Shown piece after piece: positions 13,665-59,100 of a stretch of DNA of 64,000 nucleotides. This DNA is from Stylophora pistillata (Eukaryota), in the NCBI RefSeq assembly GCF_002571385.2, contig NW_019218043.1, forward strand, positions 360,390 to 424,389, read 5' to 3'. The position numbers and the translations under genes are program-made. Every line of letters starts with the position of its first letter. Positions within the stretch are counted from its first letter, which is position 1. The notes beneath the pieces were generated by a model. The model was not told the DNA's origin. It was given only the letters and a program-made list of their open reading frames with translations, and made no database searches.

Positions 13665-16600
13665 TTACAGTTTGCTGGACATAACTTCATTATGAGCATT
13701 TGCGTTGCTCGCTGGTCCACTGAGAGTACTTCCTGCCATCGGTGAATAATAATCCCCAAGGGAAGAGGTCTGTGGGCTTCCTTGCTCACATGAGTCACCA
13801 TTGTTCGCCATAGGCTGGTAATAGTCTGCTGAGGAAGTTCGATCTCTAGTTTCAACAGCTGATCCATCAGATCTTCCCGCCATAGGCAAAGAAGGATTAT
13901 TTCTCATATTCGATGCATCCATTGGAACATAATCCTGTGGCGTCGAGTTATTTAAGGCTTTGCTGTGCATTCCGTTTTCGATCGAGACGTAGTCTTGTGG
14001 CGAAGAATTATTTAAAACATTATTGGAGTCGCCATTTTCCATTGGTATATAACAGTATTTTCCAGGCCCCTTCGTTTGCGCATTAGACGCGGTATTTCCA
14101 GGTGGCACCTGGGTGTCATTTACAAGCTCGAGATATTCAGGAATAGGTCGCTCAGGATTAACATATTCATGGCCACTTTTCATGGATCTAAAATCTAACT
14201 TCTCATACAACCCGCTATCATTGAGGTCCTGTTCACTGTCTATTGGTTCATAACTTGGCATTGCTGTAGTTGTTGGGTCAAGGGCTTGATACAGGGGGAG
14301 CGGAGGGAGAGTAGCACGTCTCCTTGGTTTCTTTCCGCCTGTAACTTCGGTCGCATTGGTCCGAGGTGCGGATGAGTTACTTTGGCATACATCCAGGTAT
14401 CGTGGAGTTTCCTCCGTGGCATCCGATGTCTCTAAAGGATGACAAGAAGAAGTTTGTCAGAAATACCAGATAAAAACCTATTGATCATACTCAGTCAAAT
14501 GTTATACAGCGAATCAAAGATTTCTTAGTCTCCCTAAAATCTAAAGGGCTTGCCACGTATATCTTTGACCAGGAAACTTAATGAACTTAAACTGTTTTAA
14601 AAATTAGCATGAGTTAGTCCCAATGAGCAAATCATCTGTTAGCCAACTTAATTTAAAGCATCACAGCCCTATAACAGAAGACTAAAACTTCAAAACACAG
14701 CCATTTCATTTGAAGAACAACCCACCTCCATGTTCTCTGGCTTTTCTTCGTTTATAAAAAACTATGATGATAATAACTGCCACAATGAAAAGCACTCCCA
14801 GGACAGCAGTTATAATGATCCACAATGCATTATCTGAGAAGAATCCACTTCTTGAACTTGGGGCAAGGCTGGTTGGCGAGTCTGATGAAATTCAAGGAAA
14901 AATAAATACATTTTTTCGTATGTCCCTGATGAAATTCATGGAAAATAAATACATTTTTTCGTATGTCTTGTGTTTCCCCTACTCTTCTTTCATGCTCTTG
15001 CTGCTTCTAAATTATCGAAATGTTTTTCATTGTTTTTGTATATGTATGCTCTTCAAGTCATTTTTGCTGTGCAGTCAAACTTGTTATTAATGAATACATT
15101 TTGATGTTTATTTCCCTCCCGCCCCGATTAGCTTCGCTATTTTGCAGGTAGGGTTCGTTGGATATGTATTTTAATTGCTAAAAAATGAATAAATTTTGTT
15201 GTTGTTGCTGCTTCCAACGTGCTTCATAACAGAAAAAAAATCGGCACTCGAAATTTCTTTATCTGTTAAATAGTGCGTCCACATGAACGAGTGTCCCAAG
15301 GCTGCAACAGGAATGCAGATTGGAGAAGACTGTTGAACTTACCCTCAACATCAACCCAAACAGAGGACACAATCATTCCTTGATCATTTTCTGCAACACA
15401 CTGAAACACGGCATCGTGCCAGCTGTCCACATGAATCAGATGTAATTTGTTCTTCTCTATTTTCACCCGAGAGCTGCTAAAAGATTAGAAAAAAACTGGT
15501 TTAAACAAATCAAACGCAGTCAATCATTAAAGGATAATTTTTCACGGCATTTCCCTTACCCTGAAGCGTCGATTTCTTTTCCATTTCTGAGCCACTGGTA
15601 GCTTGGACTTGGAAAACCGTCTGCGATCAACATCAAGGATAAGTTTTTCGATCTCTGTACTTCGATTTTCCGATCAGATCTTACTTTCCATTCGGGTGAG
15701 GCTGCAGTTGGGATTAAAAAAATAAACAAAGTAATGAAAGAAAATACTTAGCTTGAGTAGTTTATGCTTAACAATTAAAAAAAACTAAAACAGTTGTTAC
15801 CTCTACCTATAATTAACGGGAAGAAGAAGTGGACCTACTTAAAAGAGTTTGCGCATTAAAAGCCAATTCTAACGTGCTCACGGCGTTCAATTCTTTAAAT
15901 GGAGCGAAATAGCAAACGGCGCGATAGCCGTAGCGGCAGAGCCAGGTTTGAGATGAGTTGTGTCACCACGTAACCCGACCCAAAACAGTACTGATATGCG
16001 TTAGCCCGACCACGTTTGCCGTAGTTGTTATTCTTGTGTAGTTAGACGTTCACAAGGTGGAGAAGTTTTGATTTTATTATCCATCAAATTCTTTGAGACG
16101 TACCTGTTCTATTTAAACGTGGGATTATGCTCGTTTTCTGATAATTACTTACCCCACCCTCCTAATGATTCATATTAAAAAGTTGAAAACGGAACAAAAA
16201 TTTCCCTCATATGATTAGACCTTAATAGTAACAGACGACTTCTAAACAAACCTTTCACTGTGAGGTAGGTAGAGGCTGACACACGTTTCTTCCCAGACGC
16301 TGAAACTGCCGTACAAGTATAATTTCCCTGATGTTTATTGGTAACTTTGTCGATGAACAAAAGCCTGTTGAAATGTTGTCTTGGAAGAGAATACTCATAT
16401 TTGATATCGTCGATCATTTTGCCATCTTTCCACCATATGATCTTGGGTGACGGTCTTGAGAGAGAAGAAAAGCAAGAGGTAACGCTGCTCGGAAATGCAC
16501 CGGTGAGCGCCGTGCAATCTTTCTGCGTGTCAGCTGATTCTAAAGCAACGCTCATTGGTCACTTTGTTCCGCAAATCATCGACGCCCGATAGAGTAAACT

Positions 16601-19600
16601 CAGCTCTCCGGTTTTCGTAATGTGATTTGATTTGCTATAATAATATAAATCTTGATACTCCGTTTTCTTCACCTTATGTACCCGTTACGCGCTCGCCTCC
16701 AGAGCTCACGTGCGAATTCAAGTCGATAATTTCATTCTGATGACGCATCAATTCTGCGTACAATTTTTGCGCACAATTTAACAAGAACGGTCGAATACAA
16801 AACATAAACAAATCATGTCGATAATTTCATTCTGATGACGCAGAAATTCTGCGCACACTTTTTGCGCACAATTTAACAAGAAGAGCAAACATAAACAATT
16901 TATGTGGACTAATGTTAGTATAAGTGCTAGTAAAAGCGTCAAGATAACCCGAAATAGTGAAACCATAGTCCAAACATAGTTGAAGAAGCGCTGTGGAGGG
17001 GCACAGCGTCCGAATGCTTTTTCATTGTTACAAATTTATGATATCTACAACAATCCGATGTTAACTTATTTGAGGAACACCTTTTGGTTTTTCCTAATTG
17101 TCTCAAGTTATACATGCANAANNNNNTNNANNNNANNANTNNNNAANNGNNNNNNNNNNTNGGNNNCCNNNNNGNNAANNNNNNAANCNNNTNANNNNAA
17201 ANTNNANTTNNTNNTTNNTTTNNNNTNNCNNNNNNNNNNTTTTTNCNNNNTTTNNANNAANNNNNNNNTNNNTNNNNNTTNNANNNCNNTNNNNNNAANN
17301 NNNTTNCTTTTTTCTAGGGAGTGTGGAATAGATATCTATGCAGATGACAAAGGTAATGACTGGTGAAATACATTAATTATTTCTTCTGTAAAAAAACCAT
17401 CTGGTAACGTGTTCTTACTTTGCTACGGCCAAACAATGAAGTTTCTTCGGATATCCTTCTCTAGCTTCTTCAAGGTGTTTCGGTGCAAAATAAATAACTG
17501 GTGATACCTTTTCGGTTGATTCTGAGAACAAAAGACATAAGGAAAATTCGTTACATGTTAATTATGCTGAGAATTTCAAGAAAGAAAGGTGGCAATAAGC
17601 TTGTTTAATCGTTTTGGGCGTGGCTCTGGGTTATTGGCCTCTTTCAAAGATTTTTCAAAGATTTTTCAAAGATTTTTCAAAGAAAAACCGGGGTGGACAG
17701 CTAACCTGATTATTCTCAGGGAAAGAGAACATCAATGGAAATTAAAATATCAGAAAGAAAGTGTCAGGTCCATGGAATGGACGCAGTGGCCAGGATTTTA
17801 CAGCAACTCTATAAATTCTCGACCACCACCTCGAACAAGAATAAACGTATCCCGCGAGGAAATACACGAATGTGTTAGACGAATACTTCTCAAAGGAAGA
17901 AAGGGACAGGATCGTTCGATTTGCAAGAAAAACCCTTAAGCTCGGGTGTAACCCGCTGGGAGTTCGTGTAGCTAGGCTAGGAAAGTGTCTTAAGTCAATT
18001 TAAACTTCCCTTATGTAAATAAGATGTGATGTTATCACTATTGAAGTGGTCTGACAAACTTTTGGTACATTTACCAGTAGGAAGCTGATGTAGAGACCAT
18101 CCCTCCCCGGAAGGAAAATTTGCTCGATTCTTCCACTTAAATTGAAAATCGAATTTGATTCTTTGATCCCAAAGAGTGACTGTTTAGTTTCTAATTTTTT
18201 CCTGACAGTACCACCACCGAATCAAACAGTATTATAACATAAACATAGTAAAGTGCGCGCTCTGATTGTTCAACTTAGTATCCACCATTTGCCTATGGGT
18301 ATACACTGCTGACGTGAGCAATTACAAAGACTAATTTTCCGAGCGCGCTTATTTTTTGTGGTCACGTAAGATTTGTTATGTAAAAGAAAACTTTTCTGCT
18401 ACAATGCATCAATGTTATGTTATAAAACAAATGGTAAACGCCACAGTGCACACCGTTGAGTTGTGGATGTACTTGGGAGGTTTGCTAAGCACTCAAGAAG
18501 CTAGAGTCGCTCTCGGCTATCGCCTCGCGCGACTCTTGCGCTTCTTTCGTGCCTAGCAGCCTCTCACCTGTATTCATAACTCAAAAGTGAACGCTGTCGT
18601 GTTTACCATTTGTTGAAGATCAAGAAAGATGATCACCAGTTCCAAATGCTCTTGTCTGGTTAACAAATGCTCCTCGTCGGTACCTTAGGGAATGTGTAGA
18701 GAACAGTATGGCTAAGAGAGTAAAACAAAAAAAGTTCATACCATTTCCAGTAAGATGAAATTTGACCGCATGTGAGTATCTTGCCGCCTCACTTATCGAC
18801 ATCTCGCAAGCTATTCCTTTCCTGTCATTCACTTTTTTTACGTCTTCTTTCTTCACAAACATGATCACAAGTGTTCCGTCCATTGTAACCGCTGTACGGT
18901 TGTCCTCGGGAAGAGGATAGAATGCATAAGGATCTGAAGAATCATAAAAGCCCCAGCGATACCTCACACCAAAACTAGGGTCGTGGTCCGGACAAGGAAT
19001 TTCAATAGGTTTTCCAAGCGTGACTGGGGCGTTTTTGTCGTTGTCGTAGTGAAATTGACCGGCGACTGATCATGAAAGAATAAACACACATTGACAAAAT
19101 TTAATCAATAGTAACTACAATGCTATCATCGTGGCCATTGATTGCTGTAGACTACAAACATTTCTTGGTTTTTTCTCCTATTCTTACCTTGCGCGGGTAG
19201 TTAAGAGAATTAGGGATGCTTTCAATTGATCGCTTACTCCCCTTCATGACTACCCTTAGTTCGAATTTAATCATTAAACCATTGTCGCCTATTATCTCAG
19301 TACCTTAAGTTAACCGGGTGAGAGAGATAACAAAAACAGAGAAACTCTGACTTAGGTTCATACCGATGGACGTTGCTTAAAATCAAGATTACTTGTTCGG
19401 AAAAGCTGATACAAGGCTGTCACCAAGGATGTAAGCTTTATTCAGAATATTGCGACCAAAATCAATGACTCACTGACTTAACTCCGTAACTTTGAGACAT
19501 TCTGGCAACGATTCAAAGACAAGTGTACAAGTCTCCACCCAAACAAGCGGCCTAAATGCGAGATATTCGGGGTATATCACAATGATATACTTACTACAGT

Positions 19601-21201
19601 CCATATCAGGGAAAACGATACAACACTGCAGAGGCCCACAACTGGGAACGCAGCCCCAATGTGATATTTCCCTTGGAAAAAGACAGTTCAACACCAGTAT
19701 AACTGGCATGCAGCCTCAGTGTACAATTTCCAGGATATTCCATTACCGTGATACACTGCATATAGACGTGCTAAGATTGCCAGGAAAAAGTTAATGATGC
19801 CCCAGGAAAAGTCAAGACCGAGAAACTCCTATCAAATAGAAAAGTCGGTATTTGAATATGTACAGCGCTACAAGGCGGATCTTAGAATAACAAGACTCCT
19901 TATTACTTCACATACCTGTAACACGGACTTTCAACTTTCTGCTGAAATCCTCACCGAAGCTGTTTTTCACGAAGCACTGGTAAATTCCGCTGTGAGTATC
20001 ATCAAGTTATCTTCCCTTGAGAGTCCCGTCCTTCATGATGTTAAAGTGAAAGTCATTCTCAATGTCCTGTCCGTTCAGTTTCCATTTGTGCTGCAAAGGT
20101 GAAGAACCAACTGCTTTGCAAGGAAGACGAAATCCAAAATCTGATAGGACATCTTCAGGTTTAATCAAATCCGCTGATGGAAAATCAGTTACGACTGGTG
20201 GCGCTCCTAGAACAGGTTGAACGGGAACAGTTTGCTAGGCCCTCTAAATTGTTTCACCGATGCTGCACTGAAATGGTTACAGCCAAAGTAGTTGGCAGTC
20301 GTTGAAGACTTTGATTGGTGCGTCATCCCGTGAGTAGGGATGGCACACTGCTGAGAACTTTCCCCTCCCAGAGCGCTGGCCTAGTTTGATTCACAGACTA
20401 CACGTCACATGTGGTTTAATTAAAGTCCTTGCTCCGAGAATATTTCTTCGATTTCTAACTCCTCAGAAAACATTAAGAAAACGAACAAAATTTCAACTAA
20501 GCCTTGCTACGCATACGCCTCCTAAATTCAGTAACATAGCCTTTACCATGACTTTTGTTCTATCATTTACAAGACACAGCCACACCGTGTTTCGTCTGCC
20601 TCAACACGGCCACATAAAAAGAGGATGCAAGTTTCAAAAGAAACTGTGGTGCTGCCTCGTTGGAGGATATTACAAGACAATTTCGTGTTATGAACTGAGT
20701 TAATAATGTAAATTGGCCACCGTCGGTAAAGAATTTATAAAGCTGAGGTTACAATCCTTAGCCCTTGGTCAAAGCGACCGTATGATGTTACTTTGAGGCA
20801 TTTAATTTCCTTTCAAAAGTCATATATTTTTCACCTGTTCAGTCAATCCTATATCTTTTTCTTAATCGACCGGTACCGTTTTTCAAAACTTGGACAAATC
20901 GACAAGATAGGGAAATGCAATGGAGACAACTCAACTTGATGTAAACCAATCAGATGCGAGTATTGGCGGCAGCTTACCATTTCTCAACACTTACTCTTAT
21001 TGATCAGATAGGACATTAGAATTTGAGATATTTCTTCTTAGTATAAACCAGTCAGATGCGGGTATTAGCGGCATGCGACAGTGCCATTAAAATCATATCA
21101 CATGTAGATAAAACTGGGCTATAAATTTAAATTTTTTTACCTGACAAAGCCCTCGAAATCCTCAGAACCAAAATAAGCCATGCGAACCATGGACGAAGCA
21201 T
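13665..21201 (-). CDS. Type I membrane receptor: signal peptide, 4 Ig domains (neuroglian/L1/contactin-like), TM, Tyr-motif-rich tail; one in-frame TAA in exon 2
   Basis: Exons 21201-21141, 20206-19916, 19065-18742, 17521-17419, 16454-16252, 15701-15560, 15476-15343, 14881-14726 and 14431-13665 are all GT-AG, phase-consistent, and total 2181 nt. Ig motifs: LPCKAVG..KWKLNG..HSGIYQC; IPCP..YRW; LHCLA..IIWWKDG..HQGNYTC; YQWLRNG..DAVFQC. TM: LWIIITAVLGVLFIVAVIIIIVFY-KRRK. Confidence 0.88.
16722..16881. repeat. Short direct repeat (2 copies, period ~95 bp) in a receptor intron
   Basis: gtcgataatttcattctgatgacgca...tttttgcgcacaatttaacaagaa occurs twice. Confidence 0.75.
18230..18611. mobile_element. 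Non-autonomous element ending in a ~185 bp imperfect palindrome (Crypton-like, tentative)
   Basis: aaatggtaaacg...gagtcgc (centre) gcgactc...cgtgtttaccattt forms a foldback at 18428-18611. Confidence 0.55.
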
Positions 21202-24200
21202 CGTTAAAATCTACGTTTCGTTAATATCTGAAATGACAAAAAATTATAAAATGGTCAATAAAACAAAAACAAAAATGACGATCATACTTCTAGTGGAAAG
21301 TTTAAACCTGCAATGAAAGGCAAATCAAACGGCGAAAAAGGTTCGCGAGCTTTATATTTGAAACTGTAACAAAGTAATCGGAAATGTTTTCGCATTTGTA
21401 TGGCGAGAAGTTTCAAAATTTCTAATCTTACTTTTTTTTCCGATCCCTCTTCTCTGGCGAGGAACATATACGATAATCATAAAATTCTCTTTAATCAAAT
21501 ATGTGATCAATTCAAGATAAAATTATCTGTTTTATTTTTGGTTAAGAATCTACGTCGACCAGATGTCCTGGAGTGATACACACGTGAGAGTCATTCACAT
21601 TGTAAAGTCAATAACCCTTCGCGCGACCTCATCTTATTCGAAAAGCACACATGGACACGAGTATGAAATAACTTTTAAATCGCTCCGGAACTTGTACTCT
21701 GGCCTCAAAAATAGTTTCAGATCAGTGCATGCCATGAAATGTACTCTGGTAAGTCAAAGGAAAGTAAATCAGTTAATAAACAAAAAAATTAATGGGAGAT
21801 TGGTCTAATTTTAGACCGAAAGAGACAACTATAACTCGCGAGGAAATATCTCTTATACCATATGGTTGGCGTTACAAACTACAGATAAGTTCGAATATTT
21901 CTTTCTTTGTTTGTCAAGTTCCTTTGTATAACATAACTCTTGTAAGACCGATTCATTAAAAACAGCGTATAATTTGAAACCAAAATCTATAAATCAGTAA
22001 CGATTGAGCTCAATATACGAGTACTTGTTTATATAAATGATGATCTTTCGCCTGGTTTAGACAGAGCTCTTCAGCGACGAAATTGTCATTACCTAACTAA
22101 TCAAGAGAATTATTCTGCCTAACAAAATGATAAAGAGTTTTAAAACAGACCGCTTCGACTTACCTGTCACATCTATTATACATTCAAAATATCTACCTTT
22201 ATCTACGAGCAATCGCCGACAGAGTTTACGCTGCTTACAATGATGTAAACAATATTCTACAGCTGCTTAGCTTCGTGCCATGAATACATATGTCGTCAAT
22301 AGCCTGCGGCCACATTCAGCAAAGAAAAGCGAAATAAACCTTACTGCTTGAGGAACGTGCAAGTCACCTTGTTCAGTGAAAACAATCCAACACGCATTTT
22401 TCTTTAGTTTTTAATTTGTTTTCTCGTTAAAAATTAATTACTTTGGACGCTGCAATTTGATGCATCAGTAATGATTGATCACGATTTGTATACATCGTTC
22501 AGGAAAATAACTAATTTACGAACGATACAGCCGGCAAAACTGGCTAAATAATTTTACGAAGTTATTGCTAGCAACAACACCAAAAGATTATTTGACTTTT
22601 AAGCGGCGAGTATTTGTAAAGCAATTGTTGGCAGGACAACAAAACTTTAAGTTTTAAATGAGACAATTACTCTAAGAGTTTCACTGCGAGATTTTACAAG
22701 TATCACTCTTTTCTGTGTCCATAATTAGCCCGGAAATACACTATAAGAATTCAAATTTACGTGCCCTTCAGCTATTTGCTTCCAAAAATGCTGGTTTTCG
22801 CCAGATAGATCTAAAAAGCTAGTCTCCAAACAAACTTACGCAGCAATTAATACGAATGGTGCTTGATCGAAATTTCTAGGTTCCTGCAAATTCTAAAACT
22901 TAATTTTATAGACTTTTCTTACCTCTTGAAATTTTCCTCGACGCGCTTGATCCCTATTAATCAAGCGGTGAACTCTGACCTAAAGTTTTTCGCTGGGGTG
23001 AACTGATCAACTTCTGTACTCGTTTCAAACGCAACTCATTATGGAAACATGACAAGAGAAAGGTTTACAACTACTTGGTATGCGGTAAGGATGACAGATG
23101 ACAAAAGTATATATTACCATGATAAAGCTTGCCGTTGTGATGTCCAAAATTTACTGTGTGCAGTGTACATGTAATTACCAGATGCTCAGTGCTTTTGGAA
23201 ACACACTGAAAGACTTCCTTAAGAGACGTAAATTAAAAGGTTACTTGTTCGCCATAATGAAAAGATTTTTTAATTCAGATTCAAACAAAAAACCTCATTT
23301 TACACTGATCAATTTTATTTGGTGTTCAGAATTGAAGGCAAATTCTTATTTACCTCGGCAATGACGTCAGACTAACAACAAAACGTGGGTTGCCTTGGAA
23401 TGATTCAGTCGGATTAACTAAGAAAGGGTAGAAACGGAGAAAATAATGATAAGCAACTTCAGAAGGATCTATTGTTGGGTATGTTTAAGGGAACGCTCTA
23501 TTACAAGGGCACCCGAGGCTTACTTTTCAGAGTCCGATTTAAGTGGAATCCTCTTAACAGGTTTTACTGTAAATTTTGCTGAAAGAAGGAAAACATTCCC
23601 GTTCGAAAGTTTCCCCCCGGCTTCATAGAACATGTTAGAGGGTGTGGACCCGGTCCACCAGGTAAATAGTTCAGCGTCCTAACTGCTCAGCCAAACTGTC
23701 TGCTTACCAAAATTAAAATGGTTCAATCATATAATCCAGACAAAAATTCCGAAACCGTTTATTCGAAGTTTGACAAAACCCCTAAGTTATTTGATGAGCC
23801 TTTGACTAATTACCAGGATAAAAACCTTTCCAAAGCTAAATCTACCATAGCTAGTATAACTATTTATAGAAACATTGCTCACACGTTGAAAGTAATTAAA
23901 GCTTAAAAACCTACATCGGCATAACTTCAGCAATCTCTCTCCACTTACTGCACTTTATCTTAAGTACAAAATACTTCCTAATCGATAAAAAGTACATTCC
24001 TTAAAATGTTTTTTTCCATGTTAAACACACGTGTTAGTTTTCTGCCGATACTTTTTTAAGAGAACGGAACCATTCCCTTCGAAGTGGTCTTATATCACTT
24101 CACTACTTTTATCTATGACTCCTTCTTTGGATTGATGAAAAACAAACCATTGTTAATATATATACAGGTCTACATATGTGCTACTTGAGCTAAGTCCTTC

Positions 24201-56191: not shown

Positions 56192-59100
56192 CTAGGCAGA
56201 AAACTGAATTTTGATAAACATCCTATCATTTTCTACATAAGGAGAACTAAACGCCTCCTCGATAGGAGCAAACCTAATGAAACCATATCCAGTAGGACTG
56301 ACTGCTTCAGTTGGCTTCTGAAAAGCTGCAAGGTGTGGCTTGGGTTGTATAATGTGGCTAATGTGACGCTTGGCGTCACTCTGGTCTAAGATAGACACAG
56401 TGATTCTCTGAGTAAATGGCCATCTCACTTCACTCGCGTTGTCGTATTCTCCCATCATCATGTGAACAAAGAGAGCGACATATCTGCCTTCCTCTTCGTC
56501 TACGCCATTCGGGTGTAGTCGTATGCCCACCTTGTATTCAAAGCTGTCAGAATAGATCGCAGGGCTGAAGATGGCGGGTGCAACTCCGTCCTCGTCAACT
56601 TGGCGAAGCTGTGCAATTTGTGTCAATATCTCAATGAAGAATGTTTCGCCGGAATTTCTCTTGTTCCTTGTCGCTTTCTGTGCGTCATATCTGACAACAA
56701 AAGGCCGCAAAATGATTTTCAGAGCGAAATATTTTCCATCTGACCCGACTAAGGACAATACCTGGAAGTTGAACTTTGTCATGAAAGACGAGTGGTTGTG
56801 CCTGTAAGGCTTTTGCATCTGTCATCAATATCATTACTTTCACTGTTATTGTTTACATTAATTAATGTCGAAATCTTATAATACTGTTTGCTTGTTTGTT
56901 TGCTTCACTGGTTGTATTTTTCTTTTATGTTCAGATATGTATAGTAATAAAAAATGCATAATACTTGCCCGTCAAGTTTTTGTTTCCATAACCGAAACTC
57001 CTCCCTGTTACAGGTATGCTCAATGGCTTGCAGAGTGGGACCCATGGAACTCACTGCATTTACGAGAGCACAATCATACATTTGGTGGCACTGGAACAGT
57101 CCTTGTTCCTCATCTGGCTGTGGCTGACTAACTGTTTGCTGGCTCTCTTGCGAGACAGCAATAGTGGGGTAACTGAATTGCTCATCATTCTCCTGTTGGT
57201 AAGCTACTGGCTCATCATGTCCATTGATCACGTGAATAACTGCTTGGGACTGCTCTTCGTTGAGAAAAATTGTTGCAGTGTCACGTTCGCCATTTGAAAG
57301 CGTTCCACGGTTGGGTCTCTGTTTACTTTTCTCAACTTCGCGCTTATTGCCACTTGCTACATTATCATGATCAGAACGTCTGCGCTAAAATTGAGAAAAA
57401 ACATCGAAATTAGTATCACCCTGTTTCGATAATCATGAATTCACCCTATTAAGGCATCTGATTAGGTAACTTCGCATTAACATATGGAGTTTATTTAAGA
57501 AACAAAATGGTACCCATGTAAAAAAAATCTTATTTCCTACAAGCAATGGCGAACCATCAATATTTTGGAGATCATGATAGCAAGAGAAGCAATTGTTCTT
57601 TTCAACTCGGTCTGGTTTTCATGCTTACTATTTATTTTTAACATGACCCAATTTCATCAGGAACATTAAACATTTAAGAAAGAACCGTTGATTTCTTGCA
57701 TTTTGATCCACAAAATGTAGAGATTACCTCGGACTCAGACAACGATTCGTCATCTCTGCCAAAAGATCTTGGGCCATTTTCCCTTTAAAGATAAAAAATA
57801 AAGCTATTCTATACTTTCCCTTCAAGCTCTGTCCTAATGTTTCAAATTAGGTAGTCTGATCTCGCAATTTGTTCTTCAATTATGACGAGAATTGCAAAGG
57901 GAACTAAGCCTCTTTTCGATAATGAACCACAATTGTCCGGAGAAGGGAATTTGAGATGGCGCAGAGTTAAGAGCGTTCGTCTTTCAACGCTCAAAGCTCT
58001 AATATCACCGGAAACCAGAGGAAAGAGGCACCTCATGGATTTCCACTGTTACAGCCGATTTTTTTCACCTTTCCAAATGGATTTGTGGGCATAGTTAGAT
58101 GAAAAATTCAACTTTCAAGAGGAAACTTTTGGGCCTCCCCTCCCCCCTTTTTTTTGCATGCATAAGTGCTACGAAGCTCAATAAGTTGTTTGTGCTCATT
58201 TGCACACCTAAAACTAACTGAATTGGTATTTGTACTTTATGATTTTCTGGTGATAATAACGAACATTTATTTCCATAAATTTCCATAATTTCCATAAATT
58301 TCCATTTTGTCCTCACTGGGAACATCTTATGGCCCGCCACGAGTAACATTGACTGCCAGCAGATCCGAGCTGTTTTTGCATGTAAACGTTATTATTCTCA
58401 ATATTCATTAAAAGACTGCAAAGCTATTTTAAAATCGACTTAAAATAACATACTGATTTAAAAGGGAATACTGTAAATTTTTTATATTCTATACAAGGCT
58501 AAAAGATTAGGAAAAAATTAAAATGTTTGAACCAAACGGTTTCGCCCGTTTGCCATCATCAGGGTAAAGTTTTTCTTACCTCGTTTCAAGACATCCCGTG
58601 TGATCTGAGGCTAACTCGTCAGTCCCTTGTGAACTGCAAGAAATTGGATAACTCATAACTGATTCGGTTTCGACAAAGGATGTTCGTGAGCTTCTCTATA
58701 AAATAATCCTTCCCGTTCACGCAGGAAGACTGAAGGTAGTGATAGAAGATGTGTCTATGCGCTGCAATAAACAATTGTAAAACGCGCTCCGATCGATTGA
58801 CATTAAAAGACTCGACGGTGAAACTTGACTGAAACGGAAAAGCGCTAGCTGTCAATCACTGGTAAGTCTGCATAACTTGAGACGGCGATAAACAATTGTA
58901 AAACGCGCTCTGATTGGCTGACATTAAAAGACANNNNNNNNNNNNNNNNNNNNNNNNNNNNNNNNNNNNNNNNNNNNNNNNNNNNNNNNNNNNNNNNNNN
59001 NNNNNNNNNNNNNNNNNNNNNNNNNNNNNNNNNNNNNNNNNNNNNNNNNNNNNNNNNNNNNNNNNNNNNNNNNNNNNNNNNNNNNNNNNNNNNNNNNNNN

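What the first reader, a model, noticed from the sequence alone, without database searches (positions are those of the whole stretch)
13665..21201. Hemolin-like 4-Ig receptor with no FN3 and a phosphotyrosine-packed tail: candidate cnidarian immune/recognition receptor
Seen in sequence: a signal peptide, exactly four Ig domains joined directly to a TM helix, then a ~265 aa low-complexity tail with no catalytic domain. The tail has 11 Tyr motifs: YLDV, YQAL, YEPI, YEKL, YVNP, YLEL, YIPM, YVSI, YVPM, YQPM, YSPM. Established knowledge: Ig1-4 of L1/neuroglian/contactin form a horseshoe normally followed by more Ig and FN3 domains. Insect hemolin is a four-Ig immune derivative of that unit. YxxM binds PI3K p85, YxN binds Grb2, and paired YxxL/I resemble ITAMs (here YQAL-x9-YEPI-x11-YEKL). 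Hydractinia Alr allorecognition proteins are Ig-like receptors with Tyr-based tails. Inference: this is a membrane-anchored horseshoe receptor wired to Syk/PI3K/Grb2-type signalling, possibly for allorecognition or microbe/symbiont sensing.
Basis: partly seen in the sequence, partly recalled or inferred. Interest (0 to 1): 0.8.

Follow-up and report, generated by a model that had tools for sequence, protein, structure and literature searches.

The report
Coral four-Ig horseshoe receptor, tyrosine-motif tail
This is a real, expressed coral gene (Stylophora pistillata LOC111334984) for a membrane receptor with a contactin-like four-Ig "horseshoe" head and a conserved tyrosine-motif signalling tail, but in this assembly a stop codon interrupts the first Ig domain, and nothing yet ties it to immunity.

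Summary
The 9-exon minus-strand model holds. All introns are GT-AG, the phases fit, and it codes 726 codons: signal peptide, four Ig domains, TM helix and a ~264-aa tail with the 11 Tyr motifs listed. The N-peppered stretch (17120-17310) lies inside intron 4, and no exon is missing there.

A close relative has TAT (Tyr) at that codon.

The genome is Stylophora pistillata. RefSeq annotates only the 3' half, from a Met in exon 5, as "uncharacterized protein LOC111334984".

Full-length orthologues exist in Oculina and Desmophyllum and as a spliced metatranscriptome mRNA. They have the same architecture, with no FN3. The orthologue's ectodomain model (pLDDT 90, pTM 0.78) superimposes on contactin, sidekick, neurofascin and hemolin Ig1-4 horseshoes (TM 0.70-0.85).

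In 23 tail homologues, Tyr columns are 85% identical against 48% for other columns. Conserved features are PxxP+YQxL, YxNP, PEYLEL, four to five YxPM and a C-terminal [ST]x[LF].

The ITAM spacing is non-canonical (9 and 11 residues). An immune or allorecognition role has no support.

Verdict: a new architectural variant of horseshoe IgSF receptors, of moderate interest. The scan also noted the overlapping TM+tail duplication (s1-773223).

The parts
21141..21201 (-). Exon 1: start codon and signal peptide (20 codons plus 1 base)
   Evidence: Conserved in relative L030 (65%). In mRNA L023 it is the first ATG after an in-frame stop.
19916..20206 (-). Exon 2: Ig1 (I-set)
   Evidence: Pfam I-set positions 13-53 and 67-84 match on the two sides of the stop, in register. 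It is 80-93% identical to L030.
20007..20009 (-). In-frame TAA stop inside Ig1 (codon 87)
   Evidence: The close relative has TAT (Tyr) at this codon. Eight further orthologue loci read L, M or D, and the two annotated proteins P0108 and P0109 read F. All of these orthologues have this exon open.
18742..19065 (-). Exon 3: Ig2 (divergent Ig)
   Evidence: No Pfam or PDB sequence hit on its own. The AF2 model of this exon has pLDDT 78.6 and an Ig sandwich fold, and its best Foldseek hits are contactin chains, including Ig2-3 fragments.
17419..17521 (-). Exon 4: first part of Ig3 (A-B strands, first Cys)
   Evidence: It abuts E5 in mRNA L023.
17120..17310 (.). N-peppered stretch (assembly gap or mask) inside intron 4
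   Evidence: It is flanked by the E4 donor and the E5 acceptor. No exon is missing there, judged from the orthologue mRNA.
16252..16454 (-). Exon 5: second part of Ig3. The RefSeq CDS starts at a Met inside it.
   Evidence: Pfam I-set 1.2e-8; P0110.
15560..15701 (-). Exon 6: first part of Ig4 (B-strand Cys replaced by Leu)
   Evidence: Pfam Ig_3 6e-5; P0110.
15343..15476 (-). Exon 7: second part of Ig4, with a NAGNAG acceptor (15476 or 15473)
   Evidence: RefSeq isoforms X1 and X2 differ by this one Ser.
14726..14881 (-). Exon 8: stalk, TM helix and basic stop-transfer
   Evidence: Kyte-Doolittle mean 3.46. RNA contigs L028 and L029 splice it to E9.
13665..14431 (-). Exon 9: 254-aa cytoplasmic tail with 14 Tyr, C-terminal SKL, and the stop codon
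12582..13664 (-). 3' UTR as far as RNA contig L028 follows the window
   Evidence: An N run follows at about 12500-12545.
10857..11912 (-). Partial tandem duplicate of the TM exon (11912-11760) and the first ~200 codons of the tail exon (11459-10857)
   Evidence: 96% nt identity over 1284 nt. Splice sites and frames are intact. dN/dS is 0.29 on 22 changes. No transcript evidence that it is used.

Best explanation
The locus is Stylophora pistillata LOC111334984. It is a nine-exon gene for a type I membrane protein of about 725 aa and is conserved among stony corals. The ectodomain consists only of the Ig1-Ig4 'horseshoe' adhesion module found at the N-terminus of contactins, L1/neurofascin, sidekick and hemolin. 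This module is joined by a short stalk directly to one TM helix.

The cytoplasmic tail is disordered and carries a fixed series of short motifs:
- a class I SH3 ligand next to YQxL;
- YEx[LI] and DSGxYE[KR]L;
- YxNP;
- an invariant PEYLEL;
- four to five (Y)YxPM repeats;
- a C-terminal [ST]-x-[LF].

Most likely mechanism (inferred). The horseshoe binds a partner, either homophilic or heterophilic, at a cell contact. Clustering lets a Src-type kinase docked on the PxxP/YQxL site phosphorylate the tail. The pYxPM repeats then recruit class IA PI3K, pYxN recruits Grb2, and the C-terminus ties the receptor to a PDZ scaffold. On this reading the protein is an adhesion receptor with a built-in docking-adaptor tail.

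In this reference assembly the reading frame is cut by one TAT-to-TAA change in Ig1. That change is either a nonsense allele of the sequenced colony or a base error. The rest of the gene shows no decay.
For: Shown:
- Exon model and phases.
- Species and RefSeq identity, with exact agreement of the E5-E9 junctions.
- RNA contigs from two runs splice E8 to E9.
- RNA runs hold 0.17-0.21 of the sampled words of 17330-21260, where exons E1-E4 make up 0.198 of the letters.
- Full-length orthologues P0108 (729 aa) and P0109 (695 aa) and the spliced mRNA L023 have the same order of parts. They carry only Ig Pfam families and no FN3.
- One collinear match runs over Ig1-4 of contactin-2 (1.3e-28), neurofascin, CNTN4/5, sidekick and hemolin (1.9e-17).
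- The AF2 model of the orthologue ectodomain has pLDDT 90.2 and pTM 0.78. It superimposes on CNTN4 Ig1-4 (TM 0.77/0.85, rmsd 3.3 A) and hemolin (0.70/0.74), but not on extended Robo1 (0.33).
- In the tail, Tyr columns are 85% identical against 48% for other columns (p=3.6e-5).
- PEYLE[LI] and Y.PM occur in 27 of 27 sequences, Y.NP in 25 of 27, and the PDZ-type C-terminus in 18 of 27. The sequences that lack a motif are mostly truncated fragments.
- dN/dS of Ig1+Ig2 against a relative is 0.22.

Established knowledge: YVPM/YxxM are p85 SH2 sites (PDGFR-beta Y751, Gab1). pYxN is the Grb2 SH2 site. [ST]-x-hydrophobic-COOH is a class I PDZ ligand.
Against: - No phosphorylation, binding partner or cell type is known.
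- The horseshoe is a prediction for an orthologue (48-70% identical exon by exon), not for the S. pistillata protein itself. AlphaFold was also trained on the horseshoe crystal structures.
- Ig2 alone has no significant sequence match to anything solved.
- YxxL/I/M motifs can also act as AP-2 sorting signals.
- dN/dS across E5-E9 against the nearest relative is 0.65, so constraint there is only moderate.
- A search of the genome for the p85 inter-SH2 family was inconclusive.
- The stop codon would make the reference allele a null.
Confidence: 0.55

Rival explanations
1. The protein is an immune, symbiont-sensing or allorecognition receptor that signals through an ITAM to a Syk-type kinase, in the manner of Hydractinia Alr or Drosophila Draper.
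For: The three YxxL/I motifs, with their spacings of 9 and 11 residues, are conserved in 22-23 of 27 sequences. DSGxYE[KR]L loosely recalls a hemITAM. Hemolin, the only other four-Ig-only horseshoe protein, is an immune protein. A TRAF-type MATH-domain ORF lies in the same window at 56195-56818, but it is about 35 kb away and proves nothing.
Against: The spacings lie outside the canonical ITAM range of 6-8 residues. The Ig exons occur once in the genome at high identity, and the nearest paralogues are 32-56% identical. Other corals carry orthologues, and Ig1-Ig2 evolve under purifying selection (dN/dS 0.22). An allorecognition determinant would be expected to be hypervariable and often multi-copy. 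There are no expression data from immune cells: the accession numbers were absent from the text-held supplements of the coral cell atlas.
Confidence: 0.12
2. The protein is a structural adhesion molecule, for example of septate-like junctions or neurites. Its tail tyrosines serve mainly as YxxPhi sorting or endocytosis signals and as cytoskeletal or PDZ anchors, not as SH2 docking sites.
For: Its nearest solved relatives are junctional or neural adhesion molecules (contactin, neurofascin, sidekick). The C-terminal PDZ-type ligand is conserved. L1, contactin and sidekick families are reported in Cnidaria (PMC10084454).
Against: The L1 ankyrin-binding FIGQY motif and NPxY are absent from all 27 tails. 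Conservation extends to the +3 Met and the +2 Pro or Asn, that is YxPM and YxNP. Sorting signals do not require these residues, whereas SH2 domains read them.
Confidence: 0.2
3. In S. pistillata the gene is a dying pseudogene, with the stop fixed in the species. The RNA then seen would be residual transcription of a non-functional locus.
For: There is an in-frame TAA in Ig1. RefSeq could only model a 453/454-aa protein that starts in exon 5. The neighbourhood holds several decayed copies of the 3' exons. dN/dS across E5-E9 is 0.65.
Against: This is the only lesion in 2.2 kb. All 16 splice sites are canonical. The exon that carries the stop still shows dN/dS 0.44, and Ig2 shows 0.13. RNA contigs from other colonies (98% identical) keep the tail frame open. 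All ten orthologues examined have this exon intact.
Confidence: 0.1

Closest known systems
Contactins (CNTN1-6, axonin-1/TAG-1)
   Same: They give the best sequence matches (1.3e-28 over all four domains) and the best structural matches (TM 0.77/0.85, rmsd 3.3 A to CNTN4 Ig1-4). They share the Ig1-4 horseshoe.
   Different: Contactins have six Ig and four FN3 domains and a GPI anchor, with no TM helix and no cytoplasmic tail.
L1 family (L1CAM, CHL1, neurofascin, neuroglian)
   Same: Horseshoe head, single TM helix and a cytoplasmic tail with tyrosine motifs. Neurofascin matches at 2.3e-27. The Desmophyllum orthologue's odd public name ('ATP-dependent DNA helicase chl1') is probably a mis-expansion of a CHL1 best hit; this is my inference.
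   Different: L1 proteins have six Ig and three to five FN3 domains and the ankyrin-binding FIGQY motif. Neither is present here.
Hemolin (lepidopteran immune protein, PDB 1bih)
   Same: It has exactly four Ig domains in a horseshoe and no FN3. The match is 1.9e-17 by sequence, with TM 0.70/0.74.
   Different: Hemolin is secreted, with no TM helix or tail. It matches less well than contactin, neurofascin or sidekick, so the shared four-Ig format looks convergent (independent truncations) rather than orthologous.
Sidekick
   Same: Horseshoe Ig1-4 (TM 0.69-0.73), a TM helix and a C-terminal PDZ ligand.
   Different: Sidekick has six Ig and thirteen FN3 domains and a different tail.
Multi-YxxM docking proteins and receptors (Gab1/DOS, IRS, PDGFR-beta Y751 YVPM, CD19, CD28)
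   Same: The tail probably works like them. It has repeated YxPM sites of the p85 SH2 type plus a YxN site of the Grb2 type.
   Different: There is no sequence homology, and no PH, PTB or kinase domain. Here the docking region is fused directly to an adhesion ectodomain.
Hydractinia Alr1/Alr2 allorecognition proteins
   Same: They are cnidarian IgSF type I membrane proteins with tyrosine motifs in the tail.
   Different: I did not compare sequences here. Alr genes are hydrozoan, multi-copy and hypervariable. In this genome the Ig exons of this gene occur only once at high identity, and the gene is conserved across corals.

Membership tests
Immunoglobulin superfamily, I-set type domains | Sequence match to Ig profiles for each of the four domains | tested here: met
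   In the window's exons, Ig3 passes the I-set cut-off. Ig1 and Ig4 match in register but fall below the cut-off, because they are split by the stop or by introns. The orthologue L023 has three Ig stretches above the cut-off. Ig2 is recognised only by fold.
Ig1-4 horseshoe module (contactin/L1/sidekick/DSCAM/hemolin) | Four N-terminal Ig domains collinear with the horseshoe unit of solved members | tested here: met
   A single aligned stretch covers residues 46-422 of L023 against 33-389 of contactin-2, and likewise for neurofascin, CNTN4/5, sidekick and hemolin.
Ig1-4 horseshoe module (contactin/L1/sidekick/DSCAM/hemolin) | U-shaped fold with Ig1 packed on Ig4 and Ig2 on Ig3 | tested here: met
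   This is a prediction only, made on the orthologue (pTM 0.78). Global TM is 0.70-0.85 to nine different horseshoe proteins, against 0.33 to extended Robo1. The joined S. pistillata protein was not folded.
L1 family | Six Ig plus three to five FN3 domains | tested here: not met
   The orthologues have no FN3. The window holds no further Ig or FN3 exon.
L1 family | Ankyrin-binding FIGQY motif in the tail | tested here: not met
   Found in 0 of 27 tails.
Contactins | Six Ig, four FN3, GPI anchor, no cytoplasmic domain | tested here: not met
   The protein has a TM helix followed by a ~264-aa tail and no FN3.
Hemolin | Four Ig domains only, forming a horseshoe | tested here: met
Hemolin | Secreted protein without membrane anchor | tested here: not met
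   The TM helix and tail are present and are spliced in RNA.
ITAM-bearing receptors | YxxL/I-x(6-8)-YxxL/I | tested here: not met
   The spacings are 9 and 11 residues. Both are conserved (22 and 23 of 27 sequences).
PI3K p85 / Grb2 docking sites | YxxM and YxN motifs conserved among orthologues | tested here: met
   Y.PM occurs four to five times per tail, in 27 of 27 sequences. Y.NP occurs in 25 of 27.
PI3K p85 / Grb2 docking sites | Phosphorylation of the tyrosines and binding of SH2 domains | not testable with these tools
   Needs biochemistry. A genome search for the p85 iSH2 family was inconclusive.
Hydractinia Alr family | Sequence relationship to Alr ectodomains; hypervariability; clustered multi-copy family | not tested
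The single-copy Ig exons and dN/dS of 0.22 argue against an Alr-like mode.

The most novel reading that the evidence does not exclude
Stony corals carry a lineage-restricted receptor class in which the ancient contactin/L1 horseshoe head was cut down to four Ig domains. This amounts to a membrane-anchored equivalent of insect hemolin. The head is fused to a Gab/IRS-like multi-YxPM docking tail, so that contact with another cell, a microbe or a Symbiodiniaceae cell is converted directly into PI3K signalling, for example for engulfment. The reference S. pistillata colony would carry a natural null allele of it.
Probability: 0.2. Interest if true: 0.75.

Novelty: new variant of a known kind. Interest (0 to 1): 0.5.

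Why it matters
Horseshoe IgSF adhesion molecules are known in cnidarians only as the long contactin, L1, sidekick and DSCAM types. A conserved coral protein that keeps just the horseshoe and attaches it to a dense, conserved set of SH2, SH3 and PDZ ligand motifs would be a compact adhesion-to-PI3K/Ras signalling device. It is also a tractable candidate for cell-contact or partner-recognition signalling in reef-building corals.

There is a practical point too. The public S. pistillata protein lacks the signal peptide and the first two and a half Ig domains, so expression and orthology studies that use it misjudge the gene. If the premature stop is real, it gives a natural knock-out genotype.

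Tried and rejected
- **Read laying.** One local script used the whole window file as a BLAST subject. Later scripts masked or avoided the places.
- **Database searches for the 5' exons.**
  - The search for homologous proteins with the Ig1 piece found no candidate.
  - Exact look-ups of the exon-3 ORF, of P0003 and of RefSeq X1 found nothing.
  - The library of protein representatives returned mostly single-exon fragments.
- **Orthologue locus L012.** It has no Ig1 exon within 10 kb upstream; an integrase-bearing element sits there.
- **Ig2 by sequence.** The exon alone, and a profile built from it, gave no significant PDB match.
- **ESM Atlas.** It gave nothing for the tail.
- **Literature.**
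  - No paper mentions the locus or its accession numbers.
  - The coral cell-atlas supplements held as text do not contain them.
- **p85 check.** The p85 iSH2 family search of the genome gave only weak hits.
- **Rejected ideas.**
  - A cryptic intron that removes the stop: there is no GT donor nearby.
  - Exons hidden in the N stretch: the orthologue mRNA excludes this.
  - Retro-copies as the origin of the 3' duplicates: they retain intron sequence.
- The joined S. pistillata protein was never assembled or sent to a tool. All searches were made exon by exon by reference, or used the orthologue mRNA and proteins.


Full report
**What is in the sequence**

The finding lies on the minus strand. 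Stop-to-stop frames and splice signals give nine exons in window coordinates: 21201-21141, 20206-19916, 19065-18742, 17521-17419, 16454-16252, 15701-15560, 15476-15343, 14881-14726 and 14431-13665. All eight introns are GT-AG and the phases fit throughout. The total is 2181 nt, or 726 codons plus the stop.

- Exon 1 encodes a signal-peptide-like N-terminus.
- Exons 2 and 3 encode Ig1 and Ig2.
- Exons 4+5 encode Ig3, and exons 6+7 encode Ig4.
- Exon 8 encodes a short stalk, a 25-residue hydrophobic helix (best 19-aa Kyte-Doolittle mean 3.46) and KRRKAR.
- Exon 9 encodes a 254-aa tail rich in Ser, Pro and Asn.

Pfam finds I-set/Ig_3 pieces in the right register in exons 2, 5 and 6. It finds nothing in exon 3. 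Queries that carry many Ig and FN3 domains (coral paralogues, arthropod Dscam2) hit only these exons and one duplicate tail exon anywhere in the 64-kb window. There are therefore no further Ig or FN3 exons.

**The gap, tested first**

The N-containing stretch 17120-17310 lies entirely inside intron 4. Exon 4 ends after two bases of a codon and exon 5 supplies the third base. An orthologue's spliced mRNA and two orthologous proteins join these two exons with nothing in between. The gap hides no coding sequence. I did not try to read or fill it.

An in-frame TAA sits at 20009-20007, inside Ig1, 86 codons after the start. It lies between the C'-D part of the domain and the conserved D-x-G-x-Y-x-C block, with no shift of register.

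- A close relative (Tara metagenome scaffold L030, 80-93% identical in this exon) has TAT (Tyr) at that codon, so one third-position change makes the stop.
- Eight further orthologue loci read Leu, Met or Asp there, and the two annotated proteins read Phe. All have the exon open.
- It is the only lesion in 2.2 kb.
- Against L030, dN/dS is 0.44 for Ig1, 0.13 for Ig2 and 0.22 for the two together.

The stop is therefore recent or artefactual. One local script used the whole window file as a BLAST subject, and later scripts masked or avoided the places. My prior, which is inference only, is that a heterozygous nonsense allele in a highly heterozygous coral is more likely than a consensus base error.

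**Identity of the gene**

The gene is LOC111334984, 'uncharacterized protein', with isoforms X1 (454 aa) and X2 (453 aa). Both RefSeq proteins start at a Met inside exon 5 and reproduce my exon 5-9 junctions exactly. They differ from each other only by one Ser at the NAGNAG acceptor of exon 7. The public annotation therefore lacks the signal peptide, Ig1, Ig2 and half of Ig3.

**Expression**

- Two Logan RNA contigs from different runs, 98% identical to the window, splice exon 8 to exon 9 at the predicted bases. They also follow the 3' UTR down to 12582.
- RNA runs hold 0.17-0.21 of the sampled words of 17330-21260, where exons 1-4 make up 0.198 of the letters. This fits transcription of the 5' exons but is indirect.

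**Relatives**

- The tail exon has 24 homologues in coral genome, metagenome and transcriptome contigs, at 38-88% identity.
- The Ig2 exon has relatives at up to 62% identity in the library of representatives, and 74% to fragment P0007 in a direct alignment.
- A scan of JGI contigs with an Ig2 alignment gave 12 loci. One of them, L023, is a spliced mRNA in which all nine exon equivalents abut. It has an upstream in-frame stop before the ATG, and one frameshift in the tail that looks like a contig error.
- With L023 as query I found full-length orthologues in Oculina patagonica (729 aa) and Desmophyllum pertusum (695 aa). The latter is publicly named 'ATP-dependent DNA helicase chl1', probably a mis-expanded CHL1 hit; this is my inference.
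- More distant paralogues appear in Porites and Oculina. The next best hits are arthropod Dscam2 at 22-28% identity.
- The orthologues carry only Ig Pfam families and no FN3.
- No sea-anemone, octocoral or hydrozoan orthologue surfaced. That search is word-limited, so this is weak evidence of restriction to stony corals.
- In S. pistillata the Ig exons occur once at high identity. The nearest paralogues are 32-56% identical and lie on other contigs.

**The ectodomain is a horseshoe**

The L023 protein gives one collinear match across all four domains to contactin-2 (1.3e-28), neurofascin, contactin-4 and -5, sidekick, axonin-1 and hemolin (1.9e-17).

An AlphaFold2 model of its ectodomain used an alignment of orthologues and exon pieces, with the window's own exons included by reference. 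It reached pLDDT 90.2 and pTM 0.78. Foldseek superimposes all ~410 columns on the following structures:

| Structure | TM (query/target) | rmsd |
|---|---|---|
| CNTN4 Ig1-4 | 0.77/0.85 | 3.3 A |
| CNTN5 | 0.77/0.84 | 3.5 A |
| Sidekick, axonin-1, neurofascin | 0.69-0.76 (query) | 3.9-4.8 A |
| Hemolin | 0.70/0.74 | 5.3 A |
| Robo1 Ig1-4 (extended) | 0.33 | 44.7 A |

The window's own Ig2 exon has no significant sequence match. Folded alone, it gives an Ig sandwich (pLDDT 78.6) whose best hits are contactin chains, including Ig2-3 fragments.

Two caveats apply. The horseshoe is predicted, and for an orthologue. The joined S. pistillata protein was deliberately not assembled or submitted; all searches on the window were made exon by exon.

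**The tail**

In the alignment of 23 homologues, 12 of the 14 Tyr columns are at least 91% conserved. Mean identity is 0.85 at Tyr columns against 0.48 elsewhere (Mann-Whitney p=3.6e-5). The conserved blocks are:

- [RK]xxPxxP followed by YQxL (22 of 27 sequences);
- YQxL-x9-YEx[LI] (22 of 27) and YEx[LI]-x11-YE[KR]L (23 of 27);
- YxNP (25 of 27);
- PEYLE[LI] (27 of 27);
- YxPM, four to five copies (27 of 27), mostly as YYxPM;
- a C-terminal [ST]-x-[LF], typically SSKL or SSRL (18 of 27).

The sequences that lack a motif are mostly truncated fragments. FIGQY and NPxY are absent from all 27.

YVSI is YVPM in most other corals. The following YVPM lies in a stretch where only three of the 22 aligned homologues have a Tyr.

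By established knowledge, YVPM/YxxM is the p85 SH2 site (PDGFR-beta Y751, Gab1), pYxN is the Grb2 site, [RK]xxPxxP is a class I SH3 ligand, and [ST]-x-hydrophobic-COOH is a class I PDZ ligand. The ITAM reading fails the canonical spacing of 6-8 residues, although the 9 and 11 spacings are conserved.

**Most likely function**

What is shown is a conserved coral type I IgSF protein made of a contactin-type horseshoe, a TM helix and a motif-dense tail.

What is inferred is the mechanism. Partner binding at a contact clusters the receptor. A Src-type kinase docked at PxxP/YQxL phosphorylates the tail. pYxPM repeats recruit PI3K and pYxN recruits Grb2. The C-terminus anchors the protein to a PDZ scaffold.

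It works like an adhesion receptor fused to a Gab/IRS-type docking region. It is not a member of the L1 family (no FN3, no FIGQY), of the contactins (TM helix instead of GPI anchor, no FN3) or of hemolin proper (it is membrane-anchored, and hemolin is a weaker match than contactin). Nothing here supports an immune or allorecognition role. Single-copy Ig exons, orthologues across corals and purifying selection on Ig1-Ig2 speak against an Alr-like hypervariable determinant. dN/dS of 0.65 across exons 5-9 against the nearest relative shows only moderate constraint there.

**Surroundings**

The 3' end of the gene has been copied several times on this contig.

- A 1284-nt tandem copy (96% identical) of the TM exon and the first ~200 tail codons lies at 10856-12138. 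Its splice sites and frames are intact, and dN/dS is 0.29 on few changes.
- More decayed pieces lie about 16-18 kb and 39-41 kb beyond the window's left end.

This overlaps the scan's other note, s1-773223. I found no transcript that uses the copy.

**Verdict**

The structural half of the interpretation (hemolin-like horseshoe, no FN3, conserved tyrosine tail) is supported. The functional half (Syk/ITAM, immunity, allorecognition) is not. I class it as a new architectural variant of a known kind of receptor. It is uncharacterised and mis-annotated in public databases, and of moderate interest.

Noticed in passing
window 10856-12138 (minus strand): A tandem partial duplicate of the TM exon and the first ~200 codons of the tail exon. 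It is 96.1% identical over 1284 nt, has intact splice sites and open frames, and loses the last two YYxPM motifs and the C-terminal SKL. dN/dS is 0.29 on 22 changes. No transcript was seen that uses it.
   Followed up: partly
G000:C259 about 319,200-321,620 and 342,400-344,490 (16-18 kb and 39-41 kb left of the window; loci L003-L010): Further decayed copies of exons 6, 7 and 9, intron pieces and the 3' UTR (87-90% nt identity; one short 3' UTR piece 99%). Several end at the same boundary as window 12582. One tail copy carries a TAA.
   Followed up: partly
window 10386-10441 (+ strand) and about 12500-12545: RNA contig L028 runs from this gene's 3' UTR into a 56-nt piece identical to 10386-10441. 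On the + strand that piece is followed by GTAAGT, so it is probably an exon of a convergent + strand gene merged by the assembler. An N run (assembly gap) lies just past 12582.
   Followed up: partly
window 56195-56818 (minus strand): A 208-aa open frame with a TRAF-type MATH domain (Pfam 1.6e-32), so a TRAF-like gene lies about 35 kb from the receptor.
   Followed up: no
window 1355-2206 (+ strand): An open frame with a thrombospondin type 1 repeat (TSP_1, 1.2e-5). Several overlapping long frames on both strands at 1355-2300 and 4064-5069 suggest low-complexity or repeat sequence; GC falls to 0.23 at 4001-6000.
   Followed up: no
window 18426-18614 (intron 3): A 190-nt stretch that matches its own reverse complement at 73%, a hairpin-forming and possibly MITE-like element. 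Intron 4 has a tandem pair at 16715-16825 and 16810-16913 (81%). Intron 1 (20616-20777) shares a dispersed repeat with 5601-5755 and 8782-8887.
   Followed up: no
locus L012 (ENA ERZ25071797 contig, 1.68 Mb) 1-9000: In this other coral, the 10 kb upstream of the Ig2 exon is filled by a mobile element with an rve integrase, and no Ig1 exon is seen. The same contig carries a second, diverged tail copy (P0105).
   Followed up: partly
protein P0109 (Desmophyllum pertusum KAJ7377576.1): The orthologue is publicly named 'ATP-dependent DNA helicase chl1' although it contains only Ig domains, a TM helix and the tyrosine tail. This is probably a mis-expanded CHL1 (close homologue of L1) label.
   Followed up: partly
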